A program made the position numbers and the translations under genes. Positions 1 to 64,000 of a stretch of 64,000 nt of DNA are shown piece by piece. Numbering within the stretch: position 1 is the first letter of the stretch; every line of letters starts with the position of its first letter. The notes beneath the pieces are model-generated. The model worked only from the letters and a program-made list of their open reading frames with translations, was not told the DNA's origin and ran no database searches. The DNA lies in NCBI RefSeq assembly GCF_006345805.1, contig NC_043013.1:45694001-45758000 (forward strand). The letters run 5' to 3'. Origin of the DNA: Octopus sinensis. Lineage: Eukaryota.

Positions 1-989
1 TAACTCGCCTAACGATGATGATGATAATTTCTAACAAAGGCACGTAGCCTTAAATTTGGAGGAGGGATATGATTGATTACTCTGAGCCCAGTACGTAACT
101 GGTATTTTATTTTATTGCAATGATGAAAAGCTTGGCAGAATTTGAACTCGGAACATAAAGGTCCACAAGTCATTTTGTCTGCTGTGCTAACAATTCTGCC
201 AATCCTCTGCCTTCATCATGGCAATTATTATATTTGTTTCTAACATAAACCTCAACCCCAGTGTTTAACTGGTACTTTGAATGAATGGTAAAATCAACCT
301 TAGTGGCATTTAACTTCAGAATGTGAAGCTGGAAGTGATGCTGCTAAACATTTTTGGTCTGCCAGCTCAATCAATGCCCATGTTTCAAATTTTGGCACAA
401 GGCCAGCAATTTTAGGAGATGATGATAATTATAGTAATAATCCTTACTACAATAGGCACAAAGTTTGAAATTGGGAAAGGGGTGGGGAGCTAGTCGATTA
501 CAGTGACCCCAGTGCTTGATGGGTCCTTAATTTATTGACCCTGAAAGGATGAAAGGCAAAGTTGATCTTGGTGGAATTTGAACTCAGAACTTTAAGATGG
601 ACGAAATGCCGCTAAGTATTTTGCCCAGTGTGCTAACGATTCTGCTAGCTTACCGCCTCAATAATAACAATAATAATAATCAGGGAATTTATTTTGTTAT
701 TAACGAAGAGAAAGCGACATTAGGGTTCATTAATCCTGCAATTGTTAGTATGAATTAATGTTTAGTTCCTTTGTATATCTTTGTGAAGAACCAGGATCCA
801 AATAATGGAAATGGACAACTAAGTACTTCTTAACCTATCTGTTTTAATAATGCAGAATGAAGGGGTGGGTGGGAGTAGACGCAAAAACTTTATGATATGA
901 GAAATTATTTTTTTGATAATGACTTTCAAGTTTGTTAATTCTCCAAGATCTTTTCCCCAACATTCTTAGCAATCTGTTTGGCTTATTTC

Positions 990-2040
990 AGCACCATAGA
1001 AGCACTTGTTCACACTAAATATTAATTAAGGTCTGTGTGATAATTTAAATATGGTTAATTCTATATTCTTAGAAAAACTGTGTTAAGATATATCTCTGTC
1101 ACGCTAAACACAACATTAGTAATAAGAATTATTACTTATTTACTTCTTGTGGCAAAAACTGTTACTGTAATATTCTATTGAAGTTCAGCAGAGCCAGAGC
1201 ATTTTGAGCACCAAAGTTCAATTCTTGTTTACCCGTAAGCTTAAGGTCACTCACTAGTTTACTGGATTAAGGGTTTTAATCATACAAATACTCTGTGTTC
1301 TTGTGCCCTCCGTCGACCATGTAGGTTGTAGTAAATCTAAATTTTGTTAAATTTGTATATGGAAAGAAGCGGTTCTGATATTTGAAGATTGACCCTTTGT
1401 CTGACAGAAAAGTAATTGTGTGGCGTAGAGAAGTGGCCAGGGAAAGATTGGGAATCAAAAGCTTGGAGGATAGAAAGTAGAAGTTATGGAGGGGCATGCA
1501 TATTAAGTGGAAAATGGACAAGATATTAAGTAGAAGATGGACAAGATGTAAAATAGAAGGGAAGCTAGTCTGCAGTTAAATATATGCTCAACACGAGTGT
1601 GATGGCATGACTAATAGCTCTGGCTTAGTAATGTGCAATATTCACAACAAATCAAGGACAGCCACAATTGAGAAAGTGTTGGATCTCCTTAGATTTAGAG
1701 TGAATGTTGTTGTTGTGGTGGCAGTAGTGGGGGGTCTTTATTGTGCAGTTGGTGAAGATGGAAGAATAGTTGATACAGAAGTCAGAATAAATGGGGTTTA
1801 TAGAATATAGAGGTGGACAACAGGTGGATGTTATCCCTAGTGATAAAAATGTTGGATAAAGTGGAAGTGATAATATAATAAACAACTATACTAAAGTGTA
1901 AACATTCAATGCAATTGTTTGTTGAACAAAACACATTTTGTTGAAGTAACAATTAGGGATTAAATGTTTATCCTTTGTCAGACTTATCTTTGAGTTCCTT
2001 ATTCTAAATGGCCAGACATAACTTTGTTGAACTTGTCCTC
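990..2040 (-). mobile_element. Decayed Penelope-like retroelement fragment
   Basis: Frameshifted translation TSIFYKP...NYSSIF...TIKTP...KSKEIQHFLNCGCP resembles the PLE RT C-terminus (YKPTDSHSYL...SQEMAQHFLNRGYP, from memory). Confidence 0.5.
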
Positions 2041-2056
2041 CCACCCTCAAGAATAT

Positions 2057-2262
2057 AATCCTTTTTTACTATAGGTACAAGGCCTGGAATTTGAGGGAAG
2101 GGTCTAGTTAATAACTGTGTGTAACTGGTAGTTATTTCATCAACTTCGAAAAGATGAAAGGCAAAGTTGACTTTGATGGCATTTGAACTCAGAACGTAGC
2201 GACGGGTGAAATACCGCTAAGCATTTCATCCAGCATGCTAACGATTCTGCCAGCTGGCCACC
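2057..2262 (-). mobile_element. tRNA-derived SINE family A copy about 60 nt after the SELENOO stop, with TSD
   Basis: Head GGTGGCCAGCTGGCAGAATCGTTAGC, core CTTTGCCTTTCATC; flanking direct repeat (CCACC)CTCAAGAATAT at 2041-2056 and 2258-2273. Confidence 0.85.
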
Positions 2263-2330
2263 CTCAAGAATATTAATAAAGTGTATTTGTGAGTAACAAG
2301 TGCTTCTACGGTGCAGTATTGAGAGATAAT

Positions 2331-2476
2331 TTATGAAGATCAGGAGACACGTATATCATAAGCCCAACTTGGAGGTTTGCAGTCATAACTGAATCCTGAG
2401 GAACTGTAAACACTGGAGTCCTCAAGACCGGCTGCTGCGGCCGCTGCTGCAACGGCACCTTCACAAGATGAAGAAG
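2331..2476 (-). CDS. SELENOO: SelO exon 13, terminal, with in-frame UGA (Sec) at 2340-2342
   Basis: ...GFSYDCKPPSWAYDIRVS-TGA-TCT-TCA-TAA, i.e. VSUSS*, matching the SelO family C-terminus; acceptor TTTATTGCAG; 146 nt, phase matches exon 12. Confidence 0.93.
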
Positions 2477-4468: not shown

Positions 4469-4647
4469 CTTGATCAGTGTTATCAGTATTTGAAGATATA
4501 TCTAATCTGTTTGTAGAAACCTCATCCACTTCTGTGCTGTCAGTGTAAGGATTTTGAAGAAGACTGTAAACCCGGCGCACCTCAAAGAAATCACCACCTT
4601 CGGCAGCTTTTATAGCATTCTCTGCGATATAGTTGCGTAGTACAAAC
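4469..4647 (-). CDS. SELENOO: SelO exon 12
   Basis: FVLRNYIAENAIKAAEGGDFFEVRRVYSLLQNPYTD... (NPRFVLRNY motif); AG/GTAGGA; 179 nt. Confidence 0.96.
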
Positions 4648-5712: not shown

Positions 5713-5870
5713 CTTGGATTGACGCTATTCATAAGGTGAACCCTTTTCTTGCAGAATCCTTCCAAATCGTCTTCTTCACTGGCTTCAGTCTGCAATAACT
5801 GAAGATATTGCTCCAACCATGCCTTCCATTCTGTCTTGTCACTCTGTTCCTTCTCTTCCTGAGACCTGTC
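5713..5870 (-). CDS. SELENOO: SelO exon 11
   Basis: DRSQEEKEQSDKTEWKAWLEQYLQLLQTEASEEDDLEGFCKKRVHLMNSVNP(R); AG/GT; 158 nt. Confidence 0.95.
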
Positions 5871-6928: not shown

Positions 6929-7049
6929 AGCAAGTTTCCTGGCATTTTCAATTCTTTCCAACTCTTTAAAAACTTTACGAACCTCCGGTCCAAGTTGTGT
7001 TAAAATGTCTGGGTTGGTTTGAGCAATTGCCAAAATTAAGTTAAAATCT
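6929..7049 (-). CDS. SELENOO: SelO exon 10
   Basis: DFNLILAIAQTNPDILTQLGPEVRKVFKELERIENARKLA; AG/GTGAGT; 121 nt. Confidence 0.92.
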
Positions 7050-8183: not shown

Positions 8184-8378
8184 CTTGAGTTCACTCGAAG
8201 CTGGCAGTCAGCTTTAAGTTCTTCAATGGTTGAACAGTTTGAAACAAGGTATTCAAGTGCTTCATCAAGGCCATTGCCTTCCCCTCCTGGAACAGCTAAT
8301 TTACTCAGGAAACGGAAAGTGTTTGTGAAATCTGCTCCAGTTGAGGACATAGTTTTAAGAAGATCTTTAACAATATTG
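8184..8378 (-). CDS. SELENOO: SelO exon 9
   Basis: NIVKDLLKTMSSTGADFTNTFRFLSKL...KADCQLRVNS (GADFTNTFR motif); AG/GTATGC; 195 nt. Confidence 0.95.
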
Positions 8379-9905: not shown

Positions 9906-9937
9906 TTCAGCTCTTTGTGGTCTTTTTGGAAGCCAAG
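9906..9937 (-). CDS. SELENOO: SelO exon 8 (32-nt micro-exon)
   Basis: LGFQKDHKEL; pyrimidine-rich acceptor TTTTCACCAG and donor GTAAGT; bridges phase 0 to phase 2 and supplies the conserved KKKLG. Confidence 0.88.
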
Positions 9938-10976: not shown

Positions 10977-11399
10977 CTAAAATTCAGGAGGGAAAAACTG
11001 AGTATGATGCAAAGGGATAAACCAAGTGGAATGAAATGCTTAAACATACACATGCTCTTTTTTCCTCTCTAACATCAACCACTTTACAAAGTGGGCTGGG
11101 CGTAATTTTACGTGGCACCAGCACAGGTGAGGTCCGTTTTGGCATGGGTTTCGTGGCTGGATGCCTTTTCCTAATGCCAACCCTTTACAGAGTGGACCGG
11201 GTGCTTTTCGTGCGGTACCAGCACCAGTGAGATCTGTTTTGGCATGGTGTTTGGACCCTTGATGTAATTCTCTCAAGTAGAATTAGTGACAAAACTGGAC
11301 TTTCAAAAACGTGTACAGTTAATTTGCCAGGCTTCCATACAGTTTCCAGTCTATTTTCACTCACAAGGCTTTGATCAATCTGAGGCTATGATAAAAGAC

Positions 11400-11665
11400 A
11401 CTTGCCCAAATAGAGAGAAAGTAGAGTTTCTACCAACATCTTTTCTACAGATTGAGCAGGGCCATCTACCTGAGGGGATTTGTGATTTGTCTGCCTTCCT
11501 ATTTACTATGACTTTGATTTTTGCTAGGTTAACTATAAAGCCCTTTGATTCTAGACCTTGCTTCCATACCTGAAACTTCTTCTCTAGTTCAGATAGTGAT
11601 TCAGCTATAAGTGCAAGGTCATCAGCATAGAGGAGTTCCCAGGGGCAGCCTGTCTTGAATGCCAC
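11400..11665 (-). mobile_element. RTE-clade LINE reverse transcriptase fragment
   Basis: GCPWELLYADDLALIAES...GLESKG..VNLAKIKV...WPCSIC: YADD motif and RTE-type CxxC. Confidence 0.85.
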
Positions 11666-12469
11666 TACATATCTGCATAACTACATACACAACATACCAT
11701 CATCATCACCACCACCACCACTATCATCATCATCATTGTTTTTACACCCACTTTTCCGTGCTCACACGCAGTGGGACAGAATTTCGTTGAGGTGGATTTT
11801 CTATGAGCAGATGCCTTCCCAAAGAAGGTAAAATTTCCCCATAACCAGACATGTTTTCCTGGAAGACTGGGAAATGAAGGATGCTGTTTGTATGAAGGTG
11901 ACATTCATTTACAAATGTCAAGTGATGTCAAGGCAAGGAGATAGTGACATACATACACATATATGATGGGCTTCTTTCAGTTTCTGTCAACCAAATCCAC
12001 TCACATGGCTTTGGTCAGCCCAGAGCTATAAAAGAAGATACTTGCCCAAGATGTCACACAGTGGGACTGAACCCAGAAGCATGTGGTTAGAAAACAAACT
12101 CCTTACCACAGAGCCACTTCATATAACTACATACATTACATACAACTATATATAATTAGATATACTACACAAAAACTACATAGAAGACGTGCCCATTATA
12201 CAGGCTTTTGATATATAAATAAATATGATAAATGTAGCAAAGACTACCTTGGAGATTTTATATCATAAAAACTTCATATAGTTTTTATGATATATATATA
12301 GGCGCAGGAGTGGCTGTGTGGTAAGGAGCTTGCTTACCAACCTCATGGTTTCGGGTTCATTCCCACTGCGTGGCACCTTGAGCAAGTGTCTTCTACTATA
12401 GCCTTGGGTTGACCAAAGCCTTGTGAGTGGATTTGGTAGACGGAAACTGAAAGAAGCTCATCGTATATA

Positions 12470-12811: not shown

Positions 12812-12991
<180 letters not shown>

Positions 12992-15140: not shown

Positions 15141-15256
15141 CCATGGCACCAGCCAACGCATTGCCATGCCGCCACCAGTTTTGCTGTCCTTTTTACGATT
15201 TCTTTGTAGAAGTTCAAATACATTTGCTGTTTGTCATTCTGATGTTCTGACCAGAT
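15141..15256 (-). CDS. SELENOO: SelO exon 5
   Basis: IWSEHQNDKQQMYLNFYKEIVKRTAKLVAAWQCVGWCHG; AG/GTAAGA; 116 nt. Confidence 0.96.
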
Positions 15257-16394: not shown

Positions 16395-16518
16395 CTCAGG
16401 ATAAAAAGACTTGACTGAATAATCCAACAACTGAAATAATAGCTCCTTGTTGCCAGTGCTGGGTCCAGATCGCTTGGTTAGATCATCTTCTTCTTTGAAA
16501 ATTTCAAATGATCCAAAC
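16395..16518 (-). CDS. SELENOO: SelO exon 4
   Basis: RFGSFEIFKEEDDLTKRSGPSTGNKELLFQLLDYSVKSFYPE; AG/GTGAGT; 124 nt. Confidence 0.96.
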
Positions 16519-18967: not shown

Positions 18968-19113
18968 CGGAGAAACGTTGGAGCAATACGGAGGACAATC
19001 GTACATTTTTCGTGGATAGGGTTGCCCGAGTAGAAAATATCTCTTACAACTGTAGAGTCTGATGTTATACATGTTCCGGCCCTGGTGGTTGGAATACCCA
19101 GGTAATGAAAAGC
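18968..19113 (-). CDS. SELENOO: SelO exon 3
   Basis: AFHYLGIPTTRAGTCITSDSTVVRDIFYSGNPIHEKCTIVLRIAPTFLR; AG/GT; 146 nt. Confidence 0.96.
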
Positions 19114-20490: not shown

Positions 20491-20712
<222 letters not shown>

Positions 20713-21052: not shown

Positions 21053-21840
21053 TTCTAATTTCTTTATTGTCCACAAGGGGGCTAAACGCAGAGGGGACAA
21101 ACAAGGACAGACAAAGGGATTAAGTCGATTACATCGACCCCAGTGCGTAACTGGTACTTAATTTATCGACCCCGAAAGGATGAAAGGCAAAGTCGACCTC
21201 GGCAGAATTTGAACTCAGAGTGTAATGACAGATGAAATACCTATTTCTTTACTGCCCACAAGGGGCTAAACACAGAGAGGACAAACAAGGACAGACAAAC
21301 GGATTAAGTCGATTACATCGACTCCAGTGCGTAACTGGTACTTAATTTATCGACCCCGAAAGGATGAAAGGCAAAGTCGACCTCAGCAGAATTTGAACTC
21401 AGAACGTAGCGGCAGACGAAATACCTATTTCTTTACTACCCACAAGGGGCTAAACACAGAAGGGACAAACAAGGACATACAAATGGATTAAGTCGATTAC
21501 ATCGATCCCAGTGCGTAACTGGTATTTAATTTATCGACTCTGAAAAGAGTGAAAGGCAAAGTCGACCTCAGCGGAATTTGAACTCAGAACATAATGGCAG
21601 ATGAAATACCTATTTCTTTACTACCCACAAGGGGCTAAACACAGAGGGGACAAACAAGGACATACGAACGGATTAAGTCGATTATATCGACCCCAGTGCG
21701 TAACTGGTACTTAATTTATCGACCCCGAAAGGATAAAAGGCAAAGTCGACTTCGGCGGAATTTGAACTCAGAACGTAACGGCAGACGAAATACCGCTAAG
21801 CATTTCGCCCGCCGTGCTAACGTTTCTGCCAGCTCGTGGC
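21053..21840 (-). mobile_element. Head-to-tail tetramer of SINE family A
   Basis: Four units, period 184-185 nt; only the 5'-most unit has the full head. Confidence 0.9.
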
Positions 21841-24654: not shown

Positions 24655-25078
24655 ATTTACCTATTTCTTTACTTCCCACAAGGTGCTAAACACAGAGGGG
24701 ACAAACAAGGACAGACTTAGGTATTAAGTCGATTATATCGACCCTAGTGTGTAACTGGTACTTATTTAATCGACCCCGAAAGGATGAAGGGCAAAGTCGA
24801 CCTTAGCGGAATTTGAACTCAGAATGTAGCAGCAGACGAAATACCTATTTCTTAATTACCCACAAGGGGCGAAACACAGAGGGGACAAACAAGGACAGAC
24901 ACACGGATTAAGTCGATTATATCGACTCCAGTGCGTAACTGGTACTTATTTAATCGACCCCGAAAGGATGAAAGGCAAAGTCGACCTCGGCGGAAATTGA
25001 ACTCAGAACGTAGCGGCAGACAAAATACCGCTCAGCATTTCACCTGGCATGCTAATGTTTTTGCCAGCTCGCCGCCTT
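24655..25078 (-). mobile_element. SINE family A dimer with TSD GAAAATATTTACCT
   Basis: Two units; direct repeat at about 24649 and 25079. Confidence 0.85.
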
Positions 25079-26869: not shown

Positions 26870-27865
26870 AGAGTTTATGAAAAAAAAACAAAAGACGAAG
26901 ACAGGTGGTGTACAAAACAAACAGATGTATTAGTATAATGCTCAGGAATAGAAAAAGTCTTTTACGTTTCGAGCCTACGCTCTTTTACAGAAAGGGGCAC
27001 AGAAAAAACAAGGAGAGAAAAAAAATGTGTGTAGTGCAAAATCTCCTAAAACACAGAATTAGGCAAAACAGAACCATCTCTTTATTATCAACCCAAGAAG
27101 TAATGTAATACAAGAAAACCAATGAGACAGTGTAAGGAGCCTGAATCGTTAATTTTGTTAGAATCTTCCAGAATCATACTAGGATGATGCTCTTATTGAA
27201 CTATTTTGTTTGATTTATTCAATTCTCTCAGCTTCTATCAATTAGATTCCTCACCATCTTTTCTTTCTTCTTGGATACCATTCTTCAGTTGGTGTCTCTC
27301 TAGCTTCTTGACTAATTTTTCCTGGCCTTATCTTTATTTGAAAAAAAACAGGGACATATTCAAAAGTGATCCTTTATTAAAGGATGCACTGCTGGAAGAT
27401 AATTCTTTCTGTTGTAGGCATAAGACCTGAAACTTTTGGGGTGGAGACTAGTTGATTACACCATCCCCAGTACTTGACCAGCACTTATTTCATTTGTCCT
27501 GGAAGGTTGAAAGGCGAAGTTGACCTTGGTGGAATTTGAACTCAGAACGTAAAGACAGATGAAATGCCACAAAGCAGTTTGTCAGGCTTGCTAACAATTC
27601 TGCCATCTTACTTCTTGGATATAACGACAAGAATATTGTTATTCGTGAAAGAGGTGGAGTAATAGAGACTCTCTCACTGCATGATTTGTCAGGGTGCCTG
27701 ACATCTCCAGATGAAATAGTTAAGCTTACAGAGTCAGACTACCAATAGCTGATTCAGTAGAGCATCGCAATAACACTCATTTAGATCTCATTCTTCATTC
27801 CATGACAATACTGTTTCTCAAGCGGGAGATTCTTTAATTAACAACCATAGTGGTATTATTATTGA

Positions 27866-28285
27866 TGGCGGCAAGCTGGCAGAATCGTTAGCACGCCGGG
27901 CGAAATGCGTAGCTGTATTTCGTCTGCTGTTACATTCTGAGTTCAAATTCTGCTGAGGTCGACTTTGCCTTTCATCCTTTCGGAGTCGATAAATTAGGTA
28001 CCAGTTACGCACTGTGATCGATGTAATCGACTTAATCCGTTTGTCTGTCCTTGTTTGTCCCCTCTGTTTTTAGCCCCTTGTGGGTAGTAAAGAAATAGGT
28101 ATTTCATCTGCCGTTACGTTCTGAGTTCAAATTCCACCAAGGTCGACTTTGCCTTTCATCCTTTCGGGGTCGATAAATTAGGTACCAGTTACGCACTGGG
28201 GTCGATGTAATCGACTTAATCCGTTTGTCTGTCCTTGTTTGTCCCCTCTGTGTTTAGCCCCTTGTGGGTAATAAAGAAATAGGTA
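27866..28285 (+). mobile_element. SINE family A dimer
   Basis: Two units joined at AAGAAATA|GGTATTTC. Confidence 0.85.
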
Positions 28286-30256: not shown

Positions 30257-30786
30257 ATAGCAGCTCCGTCTCCGAGTTGACCCGAAAATAGACCAAACTG
30301 ATACCCGCAATAGCAATGGGCAGCTGGTTCCGAACCCTTCATTATTTTATTTCCACTGAAATATTCCACGGCCTCATTTGTCTCAATGTCCTCAACACTT
30401 AACCCCAGCAGGGCTAAAGCAGACGAAGAATAAGCAACCATCACCGGGTTCTCGACAGGGGTCGGTTGTGCCTTGGAAAAACACGCATTAGGAACGGGTC
30501 TTTGCGTTTTCACATCGTCCGAAGGATCAAACGGCAGGCACTTGAGTGCCTGGTTATCGAAATTCAGCTGCCTCATCCTAAGTTCTTTCTGGGGTTGACA
30601 TGAACAAAAATATGCAATAGCAGTGTGTAGCGACTTGATAGTATTGAGCGATACAAACGGACAAGTTTTAGCAGCCGCAGGGTCTTGTTCTTGTGAGAGG
30701 CAGCAGTAACAGGGTTCAGTTTTGCTCAAGAAGCATATCCGGACGTTCCGTATCGGCCTCAACCGTGTCAAACAGCGCCCAAACAT
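30257..30786 (-). CDS. SELENOO: Selenoprotein O (protein adenylyltransferase SelO) coding exon 1
   Basis: ATG at 30786; Arg-rich, acid-free N-terminus MFGRCLTRLRPIRNVR (mitochondrial presequence-like); then LNFDN...HCYCGYQFGLFSGQLGDGAA typical of SelO; donor AT|GTAAGT; 530 nt, ends phase 2. Confidence 0.95.
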
Positions 30787-31364
30787 GCAGGAAACTAATG
30801 GCGTTTAACCAATAAACAGAACGTTTTAAGCAAGACCTTGACTCAAGAATTACCTCCCTTGCTTTGTTATTAGCCACTCTAATTAGCTGCCAGCTGTTTT
30901 AAAGGAAGACGGTGTTAATTACGTAAACACCCATTTGGCCGGTGGCTTCAGATATTCAACGTTGAATTAACGTTTCTTTAGACTTAACCCTTTCGTTACC
31001 AACCCGGCTAAAACCGGCTTTGGCTCTGTAGTATAAATGTCTTAATAATAATAATAATAAACATTGTGTACAGTGCTCAGGTGCACTACAACTCATCTAA
31101 AGTGCATATATAATCAGGTGTAGTTTCGACGGATTTCGGAAAGCATGAGGGCCTTAAAGGATACAGTGTCATGGCAGTCAACAACTGACACAGTCTTCTT
31201 TTCATAAGTGTTCAATTAAAATCTTCCACTAAATCTTAGTCACAATTTATGTTCCTAAACACTAGCTTAATGATAACTAAGTTATTTTACTAAATTCTTT
31301 GTTATATTTAAAATAATTGAAAGAAACACATATCATCTCAAAATAAATCCGGTAGCAAAAGGGA

Positions 31365-31575
31365 GGCGATCCTTCGGTATAAGTACACACGTGGCTTTGT
31401 TTACATTTCTGAAGATAACAGAAACCCTTTTCTCCCACCCCTAACCCTAATCATAACCCTAATCCTAACACAAACCCTAACCCTAATCGTAACCCCCCAT
31501 ATATAAAAAAAAAACAACAACACTTTCTTGAAATGTATCCGGTACTTTCACCGGTACTTGTACCGAAATTACGCC
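31365..31575. mobile_element. Small MITE with internal (CCCTAA)n-like repeats
   Basis: Imperfect TIRs GGCG....TTCGGTA.AAGTAC at both ends; degenerate CCCTAA array at 31438-31497. Confidence 0.6.
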
Positions 31576-37629: not shown

Positions 37630-38183
37630 TCTGGATCTTTTCGGTTTGGTTGCCAGCAGCCCCCAAAATTAAAGTTTACTGAAAATTGCTCATCGTCTCT
37701 TTTTAACCAAATCCAGTGGCTAGCCTTCTCCACTGTAGTTTGGATATCAGTCATGGTGGTATTTACTTTACGATGAGTTAGGCCTAGCGATAACAACAGT
37801 CATCTCACACTGTGTCCAACAAACATTCTACATCCAACTTCGATTGGAAAATGCTCTGCTTTCCTGACTGTGTCTTCACCTTCTTCGAGGAGGTTTACAT
37901 AATGGTCTATCTTTTGAGCCATAGTGGAATCCATGTTACCTTCATGAGGAACCGTTAACTCGACTAGATTTACAACTTTCCTTCTTTCACACCACATCAA
38001 AATGTCTGTTTTTTTCGTAACTGGGATGGGAAAGAATCCCTGGCACCCAGGTAAATCTGCAGTTACCTCCCAATAGCCATTCCACTTTTCATCTCTCACA
38101 GGAAGTTTCTTGTTCTTCTTCTTGAAACGGATCTGCTGACCTGAGCACACGAAGGTAATGGAATCTCTAGTTGGTACTTTCAA
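37630..38183 (-). mobile_element. Non-LTR element fragment with restriction-like endonuclease domain (Hero/NeSL-like)
   Basis: TDILMWC..KVVNLVELTVPHEGN...K..HYVNL...FPIEVGCRMFVG. Confidence 0.75.
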
Positions 38184-38663
38184 TTTAATAAGATCTAATC
38201 ATGAGTAAGTGAAATTATGCTAAATACAACTAAATTGAAAACCTTTTCCCCCTGGCCATATTGGCAATTCTGAAAACTTTTGGGTGTGAATTTTACATGA
38301 GTAGAAGCATTTTTTTATATAAATTTTATCCTGAAAATCACCTGCATAAATTACACAGGTGTGCAAATTACATGGGTTTTTATGGTAATCCAAACTTTAG
38401 TACATTACTCAGAAATATAACATGTTAGAAAGATAAGGTATGTTAATATGATACTCTCTTTTACTTGTTTCAGTCATTTGACTGCAGCCATGCTGGAGCA
38501 CTGCCTTCAGTTGAGCAAACCGACCCCAGGACTTATTCTTTGTAAGCCCAGTACTTATTCTATCGGTCTCTTTTTGCTGAACAGCTAAGTTACAGGGACG
38601 TAAGCACACCACCATCGGTTGTCAAGTGATGTTGGGGGTACAAACACAGACACACAAACATAT

Positions 38664-40825: not shown

Positions 40826-41941
40826 AAATATCGCTAAGCATTTTGCCCGGTGTGCTAACGATTCTGCCAGCTTGCCGCCTTAGTCTACTAACATATTACA
40901 AATACATAGCGTGTTTTCAGGCCTATAGATGTCCTCAAATCTATTATATGGTAAAGCGGGTTTTAAAATATAGCAGAGTCAAGAAATATTAAAACAAACA
41001 TGAGAAAAATAATTTTTTCAAGATTTTAATGATGAATACTTATAAAAAAGGATGAAACTGGAATTTAAATTATTTTAAGATAATTAAAAACGAAATGCAG
41101 TGTGCCTGATCTTTGACAGCACAGGGACAACTATGAACATGTTTTTGTATAATTAAACCTCCTCAGTAAATTATAGGCTAAATATAATTGCTAGGTCTTA
41201 GAAGGCCGGAGAAGAATATAGGATTTCAGGGAATAAAATGAGTGGTGTAATAAGTTAAAAGAAAGAAAAAAAAAAATGATTGGAGAAAAATCCTCAGGGA
41301 CACCCACTGCATGAAAAACTAGTAGTAAAGTATGCATTAGCATACTTAATGTAGAGGAACTCATTCCCTATTGCATTTCAATTTTAATTACAGGGGTAGT
41401 TAATTTCAAAAAATTAAGAATTATTTTCACTGAAAAATTTAATTTCCACTCTGTATAGTAGTGGTTGGCATTAGGAAAGGCATCCAGCTGTAGAAACCAT
41501 ATCAAGGCAGACGTTAGAGGAAGATGCAGTTGTTGGACCAGTTGGGTGTTGTCAAATCATCAAATTCATATCAGAATGGAAGATGGATATTTACAAAATA
41601 ATGATGATGATGATGATATATACACACACATATATAATTTTGTAAACAAACCCAAAGGGTTGATAGATTATGGATCAAAGCGACCACAAAAGTCATTTAT
41701 GCAATAATAAATTATAATATATTATAATAATATCATAATATATCATTATAGTTATTACTGAATATATATATATATATATATGCATACACACACACACACA
41801 CATATATATATATACGTACACACACGTATATACATACACACACGCAACACATATATACATAATTACTATATGTGTGGGTGCATGCACATATGTGCCTCTA
41901 TGTGTGTATTCATATTTACATATGATATGCACATGTGTGTG

Positions 41942-54585: not shown

Positions 54586-55260
54586 CTACATGCTAGGCCC
54601 TAGCACCCACAAAAGAAGCGCCGCCAAAACGTCGTTTGGTTTTCCCCACCCTTCTCACTCAGCGTGAAGACTTGTGTTGGAAGAATATTCCTCAGATTAG
54701 TAGACAAACACTTTAAACACAGATACGGACGTTTGTTCAATAGGCACTACCTAAGGGTTTCCTTTGGTTGTGTACCCAACATGAAAAGTATATCAACTAA
54801 CACCCGTAAAACGCGGGAGGAGGCCGGTTGCTCTTGCAGCATGTACAATGACTGTTTAGTGGGAGGCCGAGGGAGTCATCTATGAGGCTGTGGTTATACC
54901 CAAGCCTAGCGACCATAGTAATAGCAGATCATTCAAGAACATCGACAGTATCGGCAACCGCGACAGCAGCAGAAACACCAGCACTGATGCCAACGACCCA
55001 GGGCACTGGGGTCAACAGCCCCAGCACTACGGCCGGAGAGGATAACCACGCCGGCACAAGCAGCACCAGCAAGACTGCCGGCTCCACGCCCAATGCTACC
55101 AACGACGGCACCCACATCACCGTCAGTGACAGTAGCGCCAACACCACGGCCAGGGACGACCACTAGAACGACAACAGCCACGGCGATATCGCTGGGCCTA
55201 TGCCTCGTAATGATAACAGCACCAATGGCAGTCCAAGCAACACTGGTGGCAACAACAGTG

Positions 55261-55620
55261 GAGGCGCAATGGCCCAATGGTTAGGGCAGCGGACTCGCGG
55301 TCGGAGGATCGCGCTTTCGATTCCCAGACCAGGCGTTGTGTGCGTTTATTGAGCGAAAACACCTAAAGCTCCACGAGGCTCCGGCAGGGGGTGGTGGCGA
55401 CCCCTGTTGTACTCTTTCGCTCCAACTTTCTCTCACTCTTTCTTCCTGTTTCTTATCCCCGACTTCCTACGCAACCGCTGAGCCTGGATGCACATTCGTC
55501 CATCCGTCGATGCTCTCGGTGTCGGGGGTTGACCTGCTTTCTCTTCTGTGGGTCTTACGAATAGCAAAGGACCACGTTTCGGACTTCTCCCACTCTGGGA
55601 CGAAGACAGCTTCGCTCAAC
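55261..55620 (+). mobile_element. SINE family C2 (Arg-tRNA-like head, different body)
   Basis: Near-identical copy at 63052-63420; both end in CAA/CAG-rich tails. Confidence 0.85.
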
Positions 55621-56309
55621 AGCAACTGCAACAGCAGCAGCAGCAACAGCAGCAGCAGCAACAGCAGCAGCAGCACCAGCAAGGTTGCCGGCCTCACGCC
55701 CAATGCTACCAACGACGGCACCCACATCACCGTCAGTGACAGTAGCGCCAACACCACGGCCAGGGACGACCACTACAACAACAACAGCCACGGCGATATC
55801 GCTGGGCCTATGCCTCGTAATGATAACAGCACCAATGGCAGTCCCAGCAACGCCGGTAGCAACAACAACATCTCCAGTCACGGAGCCAACCGAAGATGCT
55901 CCAGTAATGTGAGCACAGCCAACACCCAAGCCTGGAAATATATCGGGTCAGCCGGAACGCCGTTCCAGCTCCTGTCGATTGGTCTCCCAGAAGTCCAGAC
56001 CTCACGTCTTGCGATAACTCTCTGTAGGGTATTAACAAGGAGAGAGTTTCGCATGAACAATACCAGAATACCCATCAGTTGAAGGTCACCGTTCGGAGAG
56101 CCGTTGCAACAATCACTAAAGCACAGCTTCGAAAATTATCACAAAGGACATGGCACCGCATCATTTTGTGCCACGAAAATGATCGTGTTCATACAGACCT
56201 CCTCGATGTGTTTCAGCATCAATGAAAGTGAGTAAACTAAATCCAGTTCGTTCTTTGGATTATTGTATTACTTCTTCTTCTATTGTTCTCATTACTTTTT
56301 GGTACAGTG

Positions 56310-62492: not shown

Positions 62493-63651
62493 CTAGAAAA
62501 GAGAAAGAGCGTTGTACAAATAATTTATGAGGACATCTGTGTAAATTAGAGCGAAAAATTGGGAGAAAATGGATGAAATTTATACAAGCTTTGACAGGAA
62601 ATTAACTCTATAAGTCCTGGCCTTCCTACATGATCAGCCGACTTACTTTGAAATGTAACTTTGGTACATCATCGTTATTGCTTCATTTAGTGTAATTTTT
62701 GTTCTATTACATCTCTCCACTTCCATCTTTTATCACATAAGTTATCTGGAATGATCTCTCACACAAATTCATCAATATTTCGATAATCAGAAAACATCCA
62801 TATATTCCACACAACTTCACACTTATTCCCAACAAGCAACTTCTGTATCCCTGTTTGAAAACTTATGATTTAGTTGAGCCAATGAAACAGCAACCAAAAT
62901 CTCCTTCAAATTACATCAGTCCTAAAAAAACAGAGGATGCACAAATCGAACAATGTTCTCCCCGATATATAAAACAATGGAATGATCATGTCTGGAACGC
63001 CTTTGTCCATAAGTTTGCCCTAGGTACAAACGACAACAGCAGCATAATCAGGAGGCGCAATGGCCCAGTGGTTAGGGCAGCGGACTCGCGGTCGGAGGAT
63101 CGCGGTTTCGATTCCCAGATCGGGCGTTGTGTGTGTTTATTGAGCGAAAACACCTAAAGCACCACGAGGCTCCGGCAGGGGTGGTGGTGACCCCTGTTGT
63201 ACTCTTTCGCTCCAACTTTCTCTCACTCTTTCTTCCTGTTTCTTGTCCCCGACTTCCTTCGCAACCGCTGAGCCTGGATGCGCATTCATCCATCTGTCGA
63301 TGCTCTCGGTGTCGGGGGTTGACCTGCTTTCTCTTCTGCGGGTCTTACGAATAGCAAAGGACCACGTTTCGGACGTCTCTCACTACGGACGAAGACCGCT
63401 TCGCTCAACATCATCAACATCAGCAACATAATCAACAACAACGTATAAACCATGAACTTTTAAGAGATCCTCTAGGCGCAATAATCATTCTCTTTCGACT
63501 CACTCCCGAAGATAATCTTTTTTTTTTTTTAAAAAGGATACTGGATAATGGACGTAAAAAAAAACCCCAGAAAGAAACAGTTAAGAAAATCGACAGTCAT
63601 GACTCGTACGTATTTGAGCATGTCTGCTCGAGGAGTGCAGACCCTGGAGTT

Positions 63652-63660
63652 AAACTACTA

Positions 63661-63692
<32 letters not shown>

Positions 63693-63801
63693 ACTGCTAC
63701 TACTACTACTACTACTACTACTGCTGCTGCTGCTACTACTACTACTGCTGCTGCTACTACTACTACTGCTGCTGCTGCTGCTACTACTACTGCTGCTGCT
63801 G

Positions 63802-63836
<35 letters not shown>

Positions 63837-63843
63837 GCTGCTG

Positions 63844-63874
<31 letters not shown>

Positions 63875-63905
63875 GACTACTACTACGACGACAACGACGA
63901 CGCCA
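63652..63905. repeat. Mixed (CTA)n/(CTG)n trinucleotide array
   Basis: Alternating CTA and CTG blocks, ending in ACG repeats. Confidence 0.95.
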
Positions 63906-63958
63906 CCACCATATACTATTCCTTCATATGTGTGTATCACAAGCCTCACAACACTTAC

Positions 63959-64000
63959 AAGCTGTTGTACAACCCCAGTCTGACCTGCTCCAGCAGATCG
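63959..64000 (-). CDS. Partial upstream exon of the same unidentified gene (DLLEQVRLGLYNS)
   Basis: Runs off the window edge; donor TT|GTAAGT; phase 2 joins in frame to exon 62431-62492. Confidence 0.45.

What the first reader, a model, noticed from the sequence alone, without database searches (positions are those of the whole stretch)
2331..2345. In-frame UGA three codons from the end: this SelO is very likely a true selenoprotein
Seen: the spliced CDS is intact (720 aa) and ends GTC TCC TGA TCT TCA TAA. Known: vertebrate SELENOO ends in ...VT-U-SS and bacterial YdiU in ...VS-C-SS, and this residue pairs with an activation-loop Cys, retained here in FICNSS (exon 6), to redox-regulate AMPylation. 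Inference: the UGA is decoded as Sec. Standard gene predictors would stop the protein at VS and hide this.
Basis: partly seen in the sequence, partly recalled or inferred. Interest (0 to 1): 0.7.

Follow-up and report, generated by a model that had tools for sequence, protein, structure and literature searches.

The report
Octopus SelO gene encodes selenocysteine
The octopus gene for the mitochondrial enzyme SelO almost certainly reads its apparent TGA stop as selenocysteine and adds two more serines, as in vertebrates, so this corrects a known type of database truncation rather than revealing new biology.

Summary
On the minus strand, window 2348-2331 reads GTC TCC TGA TCT TCA TAA. It closes a 13-exon, GT-AG-spliced SelO gene of 720 codons whose only in-frame stop is the TGA at codon 718. 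The exons are 100% identical to Octopus sinensis SelO (XP_029646876.1). That record, like the O. vulgaris and O. bimaculoides records, stops at ...DIRVS.

- In 11 orthologue DNAs (Octopus, Argonauta, two decapodiform cephalopods, bivalves, Aplysia, Lingula) the TGA is always followed by TCN-TCR-TAR. All differences are synonymous, and the sequence diverges freely right after the stop.
- The TGA aligns with the C-terminal Cys of bacterial SelO and of tick/mite SelO (..RVS-C-SS).
- The FICNSS Cys aligns with E. coli Cys272, the disulfide partner.

A type 2 SECIS candidate lies 2.65 kb downstream. It is single-copy and conserved in Argonauta, and it is the only SECIS_1 hit and the top structural hit in 10.9 kb. 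It sits about 306-367 nt outside the window and scores below Rfam's gathering threshold.

Sec-containing SelO was already reported in a mollusc and other invertebrates in 2012, and truncation of proteins with a C-terminal Sec is a documented RefSeq flaw. Interest is low.

The parts
30257..30786 (-). SelO coding exon 1. ATG at 30786. Includes an Arg-rich N-terminal extension, presumed to be a mitochondrial presequence.
   Evidence: tblastn 100% identity to P0001; splice solution. Presequence role is inferred from the RefSeq name and composition.
20509..20647 (-). Coding exon 2. Contains the LKGAG Lys motif.
   Evidence: alignment to 6EAC
18968..19113 (-). Coding exon 3
16395..16518 (-). Coding exon 4
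15141..15256 (-). Coding exon 5
12814..12917 (-). Coding exon 6. Encodes VLNTDN...DYGPFGF...FICNSS (catalytic-loop and DFG-like motifs and the activation-loop Cys).
12824..12826 (-). TGC codon of Cys383, in FICNSS. Aligns with E. coli YdiU Cys272, the proposed redox partner of the C-terminal Sec.
   Evidence: Alignment to E. coli and P. syringae chains; Cys272-Cys476 disulfide as described in PMC7278666
10804..10976 (-). Coding exon 7
9906..9937 (-). Coding exon 8 (32-nt micro-exon)
8184..8378 (-). Coding exon 9
6929..7049 (-). Coding exon 10
5713..5870 (-). Coding exon 11
4469..4647 (-). Coding exon 12
2331..2476 (-). Coding exon 13, the last one. Ends ...PPSWAYDIRVS-U-SS-stop.
2340..2342 (-). 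TGA, codon 718. Proposed selenocysteine codon.
   Evidence: Aligns with the C-terminal Cys of P. syringae SelO and of tick/mite SelO. Invariant TGA in 11 orthologue DNAs.
2331..2339 (-). TCT TCA TAA: Ser719, Ser720 and the true stop codon.
   Evidence: Codon positions 1-2 are invariant in 11 orthologues (0 of 6 sites vary), against 6 of 6 varying in the next three triplets.
1..2330 (-). Proximal part of the 3'UTR. It is largely repeat-derived (SINE-like copies at 2085-2270 and 543-664) and contains no canonical SECIS. The SECIS candidate lies 306-367 nt beyond window position 1 (O. sinensis locus L006 41092-41153; ATGA at 41101, AA at 41117-41118, GA at 41142-41143).
   Evidence: No SECIS in the window; SECIS candidate; conserved in Argonauta; window-to-L006 mapping; repeat copies

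Best explanation
This is the Octopus sinensis/vulgaris-type orthologue of SELENOO, the mitochondrial protein adenylyltransferase (AMPylating pseudokinase). The TGA at codon 718 is decoded as selenocysteine and translation then ends two serines later at TAA, giving a 720-residue protein ending ...RVS-U-SS.

Decoding is directed by a type 2 SECIS stem-loop in a long 3'UTR. The SECIS lies about 2.65 kb after the TGA, just outside the window.

By analogy with bacterial SelO, the penultimate-region Sec forms a reversible selenenylsulfide with Cys383 of the activation loop (FICNSS), which switches AMPylation activity with redox state.

What is shown: the gene structure, the in-frame TGA, its homology to Cys, selection on the post-TGA codons, and a conserved SECIS-like element. 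What is inferred: actual Sec insertion, that the 3'UTR is continuous up to the SECIS, and the redox mechanism.
For: 1. Gene model. There are 13 GT-AG exons and 720 codons, with a single internal TGA. Identity to O. sinensis SelO is 100%. The protein carries PF02696 and matches SelO structures 6EAC and 6III at E=1e-100 to 1e-97, with KGAG, HGVxNTDN and D[FY]G conserved.

2. Post-TGA codons. The 11 orthologue DNAs read as follows:
- Octopus: TGA TCT TCA TAA
- Argonauta: TGA TCG TCG TAA
- Decapodiform transcripts: TGA TCT TCG TAG and TGA TCT TCA TAG
- Two further Logan transcript contigs (L008, L009): TCT TCA TAA and TCT TCG TAA
- Oyster: TCC TCG TAG
- Aplysia: TCC TCA TAA
- Scallop: TCC TCG TAA
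- Mussel: TCA TCG TAA
- Lingula: TCT TCG TAA
Mean pairwise identity is 0.87 for TGA plus three codons, 0.33 for the next 18 nt, and 0.55 for the six codons before the TGA.

3. Homologous position. P. syringae ...PPDWGKHLEIS-C-SS aligns with ...PPSWAYDIRVS-[TGA]-SS. Six chelicerate orthologues end RVS-C-SS, and 108 of 120 orthologue proteins are cut at V[S/T].

4. SECIS candidate.
- It is the only SECIS_1 hit in 12 kb downstream. It scores 22.5 bits, with E=1.6 across 4,227 families, which is about 4e-4 for that family alone.
- It is the top hit of an independent SECISearch-style scan at -17.9 kcal/mol, against -10.0 for the next hit.
- It has ATGA, an unpaired AA 12 nt later, GA, a 10-position helix II and an apical mini-stem.
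- It is single-copy.
- It is one of only two significant conserved islands between the Octopus and Argonauta 3' flanks (E=2.5e-10). The ATGA, AA and TGA motifs are invariant, helix II is 94% paired and the mini-stem 100% paired.
- Poly(A)-type signals lie 70-130 nt downstream of it.
- Oyster, Aplysia, scallop, mussel and Lingula SelO each have a comparable SECIS candidate 0.17-1.3 kb after their TGA.
- The oyster candidate also scores below Rfam's gathering score (28.8), so the low Octopus score is typical for this gene.

5. Redox partner. The FICNSS Cys aligns with E. coli Cys272. The Cys272-Cys476 disulfide is described in PMC7278666.

6. Literature. Sec-SelO has been reported in Lottia, Capitella, amphioxus, Nematostella, Trichoplax and a sponge (PMC3473315).
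Against: - The SECIS candidate is below Rfam's gathering score (22.5 against 35).
- Its predicted folding energy is no better than shuffled sequence (z = -0.59 for Octopus, +0.64 for Argonauta).
- In Argonauta, helix I is poorly preserved and helix II has one extra A.C mismatch. With only two sequences there are no compensatory double changes.
- My own scanner has a background of about 0.15 equally good hits per 10.9 kb.
- The SECIS is outside the window. It is separated from the TGA by 2.65 kb of repeat-rich sequence whose presence in the mature mRNA I could not verify.
- The decapodiform transcript contigs end within about 600 nt of the stop without a SECIS, probably because they are incomplete.
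- There is no proteomic or 75Se evidence, and the Sec machinery of the octopus genome was not examined.
Confidence: 0.9

Rival explanations
1. The TGA is a genuine stop. Octopus SelO is a 717-residue protein ending in VS, as annotated, and the Ser-Ser-TAA that follows is a non-functional remnant.
For: All public octopus gene models end there. No SECIS reaches Rfam's curated threshold.
Against: A remnant would drift. Instead TCN-TCR-TAR is kept with only synonymous changes in 11 of 11 lineages, including three cephalopod lineages, while adjacent UTR sequence is unalignable. A SECIS-like element is conserved between Octopus and Argonauta. Lineages that gave up Sec in SelO (ticks and mites) carry Cys there, not a stop. 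RefSeq is documented to mis-call exactly this class of gene.
Confidence: 0.03
2. Sec is inserted, but the functional SECIS is a different element from the candidate at L006 41092-41153. It could lie further along the annotated gene range, which extends to 10.9 kb, or it could be brought closer by a 3'UTR intron.
For: The O. sinensis gene range extends to a poly(A) site 10.9 kb past the TGA. The candidate's scores are moderate.
Against: Neither Rfam nor the structural scan finds any other credible SECIS between the TGA and that distal poly(A) site. The candidate is the conserved one in Argonauta.
Confidence: 0.06
3. The TGA is bypassed without Sec. One route is cephalopod A-to-I editing of UGA to UGG (Trp). 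Another is near-cognate read-through, giving a 720-residue protein with a standard amino acid at position 718.
For: From general knowledge, coleoid cephalopods recode mRNAs extensively by A-to-I editing. The 3'UTR is rich in repeats that could form double-stranded RNA. Nothing here tests this directly.
Against: The same TGA-Ser-Ser-stop arrangement is conserved in bivalves, gastropods and a brachiopod, which, from general knowledge, are not known for such extensive recoding by editing. The homologous residue is Cys or Sec, a redox residue that Trp could not replace. A conserved SECIS-like element would be unexplained.
Confidence: 0.01

Closest known systems
Vertebrate SELENOO (selenoprotein O, mitochondrial protein adenylyltransferase)
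   Same: Same PF02696 pseudokinase domain and an N-terminal extension. A single Sec lies three residues from the C-terminus, followed by Ser-Ser-stop, with the SECIS in the 3'UTR. About 50-55% protein identity.
   Different: Octopus and other molluscs have R-V-[S/T]-U rather than the chordate C-V-T-U, so the 'CxxU' motif is absent. The SECIS is further from the UGA (2.65 kb), across repeat insertions.
Invertebrate Sec-containing SelO (Lottia gigantea, Capitella teleta, Branchiostoma floridae and others; Jiang et al. 2012, PMC3473315)
   Same: Same gene family, with one Sec-SelO gene per genome. The orthologues examined here (oyster, Aplysia, scallop, mussel, Lingula) show the same TGA-Ser-Ser-stop and type 2 SECIS candidates.
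   Different: No paper I found in two full-text searches reports it for cephalopods, and the octopus database records lack the Sec.
Bacterial SelO/YdiU (E. coli, P. syringae; PDB 6EAC, 6III, 6K20)
   Same: The catalytic motifs, the activation-loop Cys (FICNHSD against FICNSSD) and the C-terminal x-S-[C/U]-S-S tail align residue for residue. The Cys272-Cys476 disulfide is reported to regulate activity.
   Different: Cys instead of Sec, no SECIS and no mitochondrial presequence. The octopus protein has an inserted, low-complexity region of about 170 residues before the tail.
Chelicerate SelO (Ixodes, Haemaphysalis, Rhipicephalus, Dinothrombium)
   Same: Close animal orthologues that end ..LRVS-C-SS at the same position.
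   Different: Cys form, so there is no recoding.

Membership tests
SelO/YdiU protein adenylyltransferase (Pfam PF02696) | PF02696 domain with significant similarity to solved SelO structures | tested here: met
   PF02696 is precomputed for the identical protein P0001. 6EAC matches at E=1.8e-100 and 6III at E=2.3e-97.
SelO/YdiU protein adenylyltransferase (Pfam PF02696) | Active-site motifs of the flipped-ATP pseudokinase: the Lys in LKGAG, HGVxNTDN, and D[FY]G | tested here: met
   [22 protein letters not shown] and VDYGPFGF align with the P. syringae and E. coli motifs. That these residues are catalytic is from general knowledge of the family.
SelO/YdiU protein adenylyltransferase (Pfam PF02696) | C-terminal [C/U]-S-S tail, plus an activation-loop Cys | tested here: met
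   ..RVS-[TGA]-SS aligns with EIS-C-SS. The FICNSS Cys383 aligns with E. coli Cys272.
Eukaryotic selenoprotein (SECIS-dependent UGA recoding) | In-frame UGA at a position occupied by Cys or Sec in homologues | tested here: met
Eukaryotic selenoprotein (SECIS-dependent UGA recoding) | Coding constraint continues past the UGA to a conserved downstream stop | tested here: met
   At positions 1-2 of the Ser, Ser and stop codons, 0 of 6 sites vary across 11 orthologues, against 6 of 6 in the next three triplets. All differences are synonymous.
Eukaryotic selenoprotein (SECIS-dependent UGA recoding) | SECIS element in the 3'UTR: an AUGA...AA...GA kink-turn core with helix II of suitable length | tested here: met
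   The motif and geometry are present at L006 41101-41143. It is the top structural hit, the only SECIS_1 hit, conserved in Argonauta and single-copy.

Caveats:
- It scores 22.5 bits, below Rfam's gathering score of 35. The oyster SelO candidate is also below it at 28.8.
- It lies outside the window.
- Its inclusion in the mature mRNA has not been verified.
Eukaryotic selenoprotein (SECIS-dependent UGA recoding) | Sec physically incorporated (75Se labelling or mass spectrometry) | not testable with these tools
   This needs experiment.
Eukaryotic selenoprotein (SECIS-dependent UGA recoding) | Sec machinery in the same genome (tRNA-Sec, SECISBP2, eEFSec, SEPHS2, PSTK, SEPSECS) | not tested
   None of these genes is in the window, and no octopus-wide search was possible with the caps available. 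Selection on the USS codons and the SECIS in cephalopods implies that the machinery is present.

The most novel reading that the evidence does not exclude
In octopus, repeat insertions have pushed the SECIS 2.65 kb from the UGA, and alternative poly(A) sites lie both before and far beyond it. The gene might therefore produce two products in a regulated way: a Sec-containing 720-residue enzyme with the redox switch, and a 717-residue form without it. The choice would depend on tissue, selenium supply or 3'UTR isoform, and could perhaps be modulated by cephalopod A-to-I editing in the repeat-rich UTR.
Probability: 0.05. Interest if true: 0.5.

Novelty: new member of a known kind. Interest (0 to 1): 0.2.

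Why it matters
The practical value is annotation. The RefSeq/GenBank SelO proteins of O. sinensis, O. vulgaris, O. bimaculoides and Argonauta, and 108 of the 120 closest orthologue records retrieved, lack the last three residues. Those residues include the one that gives the family its name and probably its redox regulation. This example extends to cephalopods and other lophotrochozoans a flaw already quantified for vertebrates, the truncation of selenoproteins with a C-terminal Sec. It also shows that Rfam's SECIS model under-scores SelO SECIS candidates in these phyla. It does not change what is understood about SelO or about selenocysteine decoding.

Tried and rejected
1. An Rfam scan of the in-window 3' region (1-2600) found no SECIS. 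A relaxed pattern scan of window 2330-1 gave only weak TTGA/GTGA hairpins. I conclude the SECIS is not in the window.

2. An Rfam scan of four decapodiform transcript contigs and three other transcript contigs found no SECIS. Their 3'UTRs (59-760 nt) are probably incomplete, so this says nothing either way.

3. I attempted a leave-one-out covariance model built from non-cephalopod SelO SECIS elements.
- MAFFT could not align the five hairpins in structural register.
- A two-sequence seed model (scallop plus mussel, R1) recovered the oyster element only weakly (15.5 bits) and missed Aplysia and Lingula.
- I abandoned this route rather than build a noisy model.

4. Thermodynamic z-scores of the SECIS hairpins were not distinctive, so I do not use them as support.

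5. I suspected an alternative coding 3' exon, because the O. sinensis gene range ends 10.9 kb past the TGA. That end is a poly(A) site about 30 nt after an AATAAA, not a stop codon.

Baclaocos et al. 2019 (PMC6885538) is not held. One orthologue (Pomacea) had no encoding contig on record.

Full report
**What is in the sequence**

The finding's 15 bases lie on the minus strand. Window 2348-2331 reads GTC TCC TGA TCT TCA TAA.

Stop-free segments upstream on that strand carry recognisable SelO peptides. The N-terminal part matches P. syringae SelO (PDB 6EAC) at E=4e-33. A search of the large protein collection returned Octopus sinensis 'protein adenylyltransferase SelO, mitochondrial isoform X1' (P0001, XP_029646876.1, 717 aa, PF02696) as the best hit. 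tblastn shows that every exon in the window is 100% identical to it.

I required the spliced translation to equal P0001 followed by *SS*. This gives one solution:
- 13 coding exons between window 30786 and 2331, with a GT donor and AG acceptor at every intron.
- 2,163 nt of CDS, which is 720 codons plus TAA.
- The only internal stop is the TGA at codon 718 (window 2342-2340), in the last coding exon.
- FICNSS is in coding exon 6, with Cys383 at 12826-12824.

**Is the TGA read as Sec?**

There are three independent lines of evidence.

1. Homology of the position.
- The octopus tail ...PPSWAYDIRVS-[TGA]-SS aligns with ...PPDWGKHLEIS-C-SS of P. syringae SelO.
- Of the 120 best orthologue proteins, 108 end at ..V[S/T], exactly one residue short of this position.
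- Six chelicerate proteins end ..RVS-C-SS.
- One rodent entry ends CVT-SS, with the U dropped.

2. Selection beyond the TGA. I retrieved the encoding DNA of ten other orthologues:
- Argonauta hians (genome).
- Two decapodiform cephalopod transcripts.
- Two further mollusc-like transcripts.
- Magallana gigas, Aplysia californica, Ylistrum balloti, Mytilus galloprovincialis and the brachiopod Lingula anatina (genomes).

All read TGA TCN TCR TAR. Across the 11 sequences, codon positions 1 and 2 of Ser, Ser and stop never vary (0 of 6 sites), while all 6 corresponding sites vary in the next three triplets. Third positions vary freely and always synonymously. Mean pairwise identity is 0.87 for TGA plus three codons, 0.33 for the following 18 nt, and 0.55 for the six sense codons before the TGA. 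Ser-Ser-stop occurs at 2e-4 of arbitrary 3'UTR positions. This is the signature of translated codons, not of UTR.

3. A SECIS.

Nothing in the window qualifies. The window ends only 2,330 nt after the stop. The O. sinensis locus L006 contains the window exactly, with window position 1 equal to L006 40786. Its recorded gene range ends 10.9 kb past the TGA, at a site about 30 nt after an AATAAA, so I take the UTR to be long.

An Rfam scan of 12 kb downstream gives a single SECIS_1 hit, at L006 41092-41153 on the gene strand. It scores 22.5 bits with E=1.6 for 4,227 families, which is about 4e-4 for that family alone, and E=0.045 on a 351-nt slice.

Its anatomy is canonical type 2:
- Helix I.
- AUGA.
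- A 10-position helix II with one U.U mismatch.
- An unpaired AA 12 nt after AUGA.
- A 4-bp apical mini-stem.
- UGA on the 3' side.

A SECISearch-style scanner that I wrote independently ranks it first in 10.9 kb, at -17.9 kcal/mol. The next hit is -10.0 and non-canonical.

It is single-copy in everything I hold. It is one of only two significant conserved islands between the Octopus and Argonauta 3' flanks (E=2.5e-10). The other island matches no annotated feature and was not examined. In the alignment of the SECIS region, ATGA, AA and TGA are invariant. Helix II is 94% paired and the mini-stem 100% paired across the two species. Poly(A)-type signals follow 70-130 nt later.

The same scanner finds one strong canonical candidate 0.17-1.3 kb after the TGA in each of oyster, Aplysia, scallop, mussel and Lingula.

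**Weaknesses of the SECIS evidence**

I do not want to overstate this line.
- The score is below Rfam's gathering threshold of 35. The oyster SelO candidate also fails it (28.8), and the Aplysia and Lingula candidates are not reported at all, so the model is simply insensitive here.
- Folding energies are no better than shuffles.
- Helix I is poorly kept in Argonauta, which also has an extra A.C mismatch. Two sequences give no compensatory changes.
- My scanner's background is about 4 equally good canonical hits per 287 kb, or about 0.15 expected in 10.9 kb.
- I could not confirm from transcripts that the 2.65 kb between the stop and the SECIS is retained in the mRNA. That stretch includes SINE-like repeats present in 25 copies in the window.

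**Mechanism**

The FICNSS Cys aligns with the Cys of FICNHSD in P. syringae and E. coli SelO. By my count on the E. coli chain, which carries a four-residue offset, this is Cys272. [quoted passage not shown]

The catalytic motifs (LKGAG, HGVLNTDN, DYG) are intact.

The most likely mechanism is therefore SECIS-directed insertion of Sec718, which pairs reversibly with Cys383 to gate AMPylation. This last step is inference by homology.

**Comparison with what is known, and novelty**

Jiang et al. 2012 (PMC3473315) already list one Sec-containing SelO in each of six invertebrates, including the mollusc Lottia gigantea.

All public octopus records end at ...DIRVS. These are O. sinensis X1 and X2, O. 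bimaculoides XP_014772372.1 and O. vulgaris CAI9734993.1.

I found no paper dealing with cephalopod SelO or a cephalopod selenoproteome in the held library.

The finding is thus a correct, well-supported annotation fix: a new member of a known kind, and of low surprise to a specialist.

**Verdict**

The SECIS is probably the conserved element just outside the window. Interest is 0.2.

Noticed in passing
window 2085-2270, 543-664, 21143-21834, 24747-25076, 27859-28196 and about 15 other sites: An abundant SINE-like interspersed repeat with 25 copies in the window at 75-84% identity. One copy lies right after the SelO stop codon. Several copies sit head-to-tail at a spacing of about 184 nt: four in a row at 21143, 21327, 21511 and 21696, and pairs at 24747/24931 and 28018/28196.
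   Followed up: partly
window 5713 downward (intron 11); protein P0121: O. sinensis isoform X3 (XP_036366439.1, 640 aa) ends ...VNPRYYIVPIVSSYNHECFSMIDFNINILQF. This is read-through of the exon 11 donor into intron 11. That product would lack the C-terminal domain and the Sec tail altogether.
   Followed up: no
C-termini of orthologues (proteins P0001-P0043): The 'CxxU' motif cited for mammalian SelO is not conserved. Cephalopods, bivalves and gastropods have R-V-[S/T]-U and Lingula has T-V-T-U. Only amphioxus, among those read here, has C-V-T-U. This fits the activation-loop Cys, rather than a CxxU Cys, being the conserved redox partner.
   Followed up: partly
proteins P0054, P0081, P0086, P0093, P0094, P0106: Tick and mite SelO orthologues carry Cys at the Sec position (..LRVS-C-SS), a Sec-to-Cys replacement in chelicerates.
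   Followed up: no
window 11378-11680, minus strand (intron 6): A reverse-transcriptase fragment with a YADDLAL motif. RVT_1 matches at E=8e-6 and 26 bits, just under Pfam's cut-off. It is probably a decayed retroelement. A 132-aa ORF at 37803-38198 (minus strand) had no Pfam match.
   Followed up: partly
window 54900-56100: A GC-rich segment (GC 0.53, against about 0.38 elsewhere) with long low-complexity ORFs on both strands (Ser/Asn-rich and Ala/Val-rich). No Pfam match.
   Followed up: partly
window 63650-64000: A long trinucleotide-type simple repeat, translating as poly-Leu, poly-Tyr/Cys or poly-Val/Ala depending on frame and strand. It runs to the right-hand edge of the window.
   Followed up: no
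L005 (Argonauta) 31349-31420 and 30725-30776: In the Argonauta SelO 3' flank there is a tRNA-like match above Rfam's gathering score (31.5 bits against 29) about 150 nt after the SECIS candidate, and a weak Hammerhead_1 match (22 bits against 34) upstream of the SECIS candidate. They may be repeat-derived.
   Followed up: no
L006 45911-46063 (outside the window): A long (GT)n/(AT)n palindromic microsatellite that gives spurious miRNA-family matches in Rfam (mir-5014, MIR810 and others). All are far below their gathering scores.
   Followed up: no
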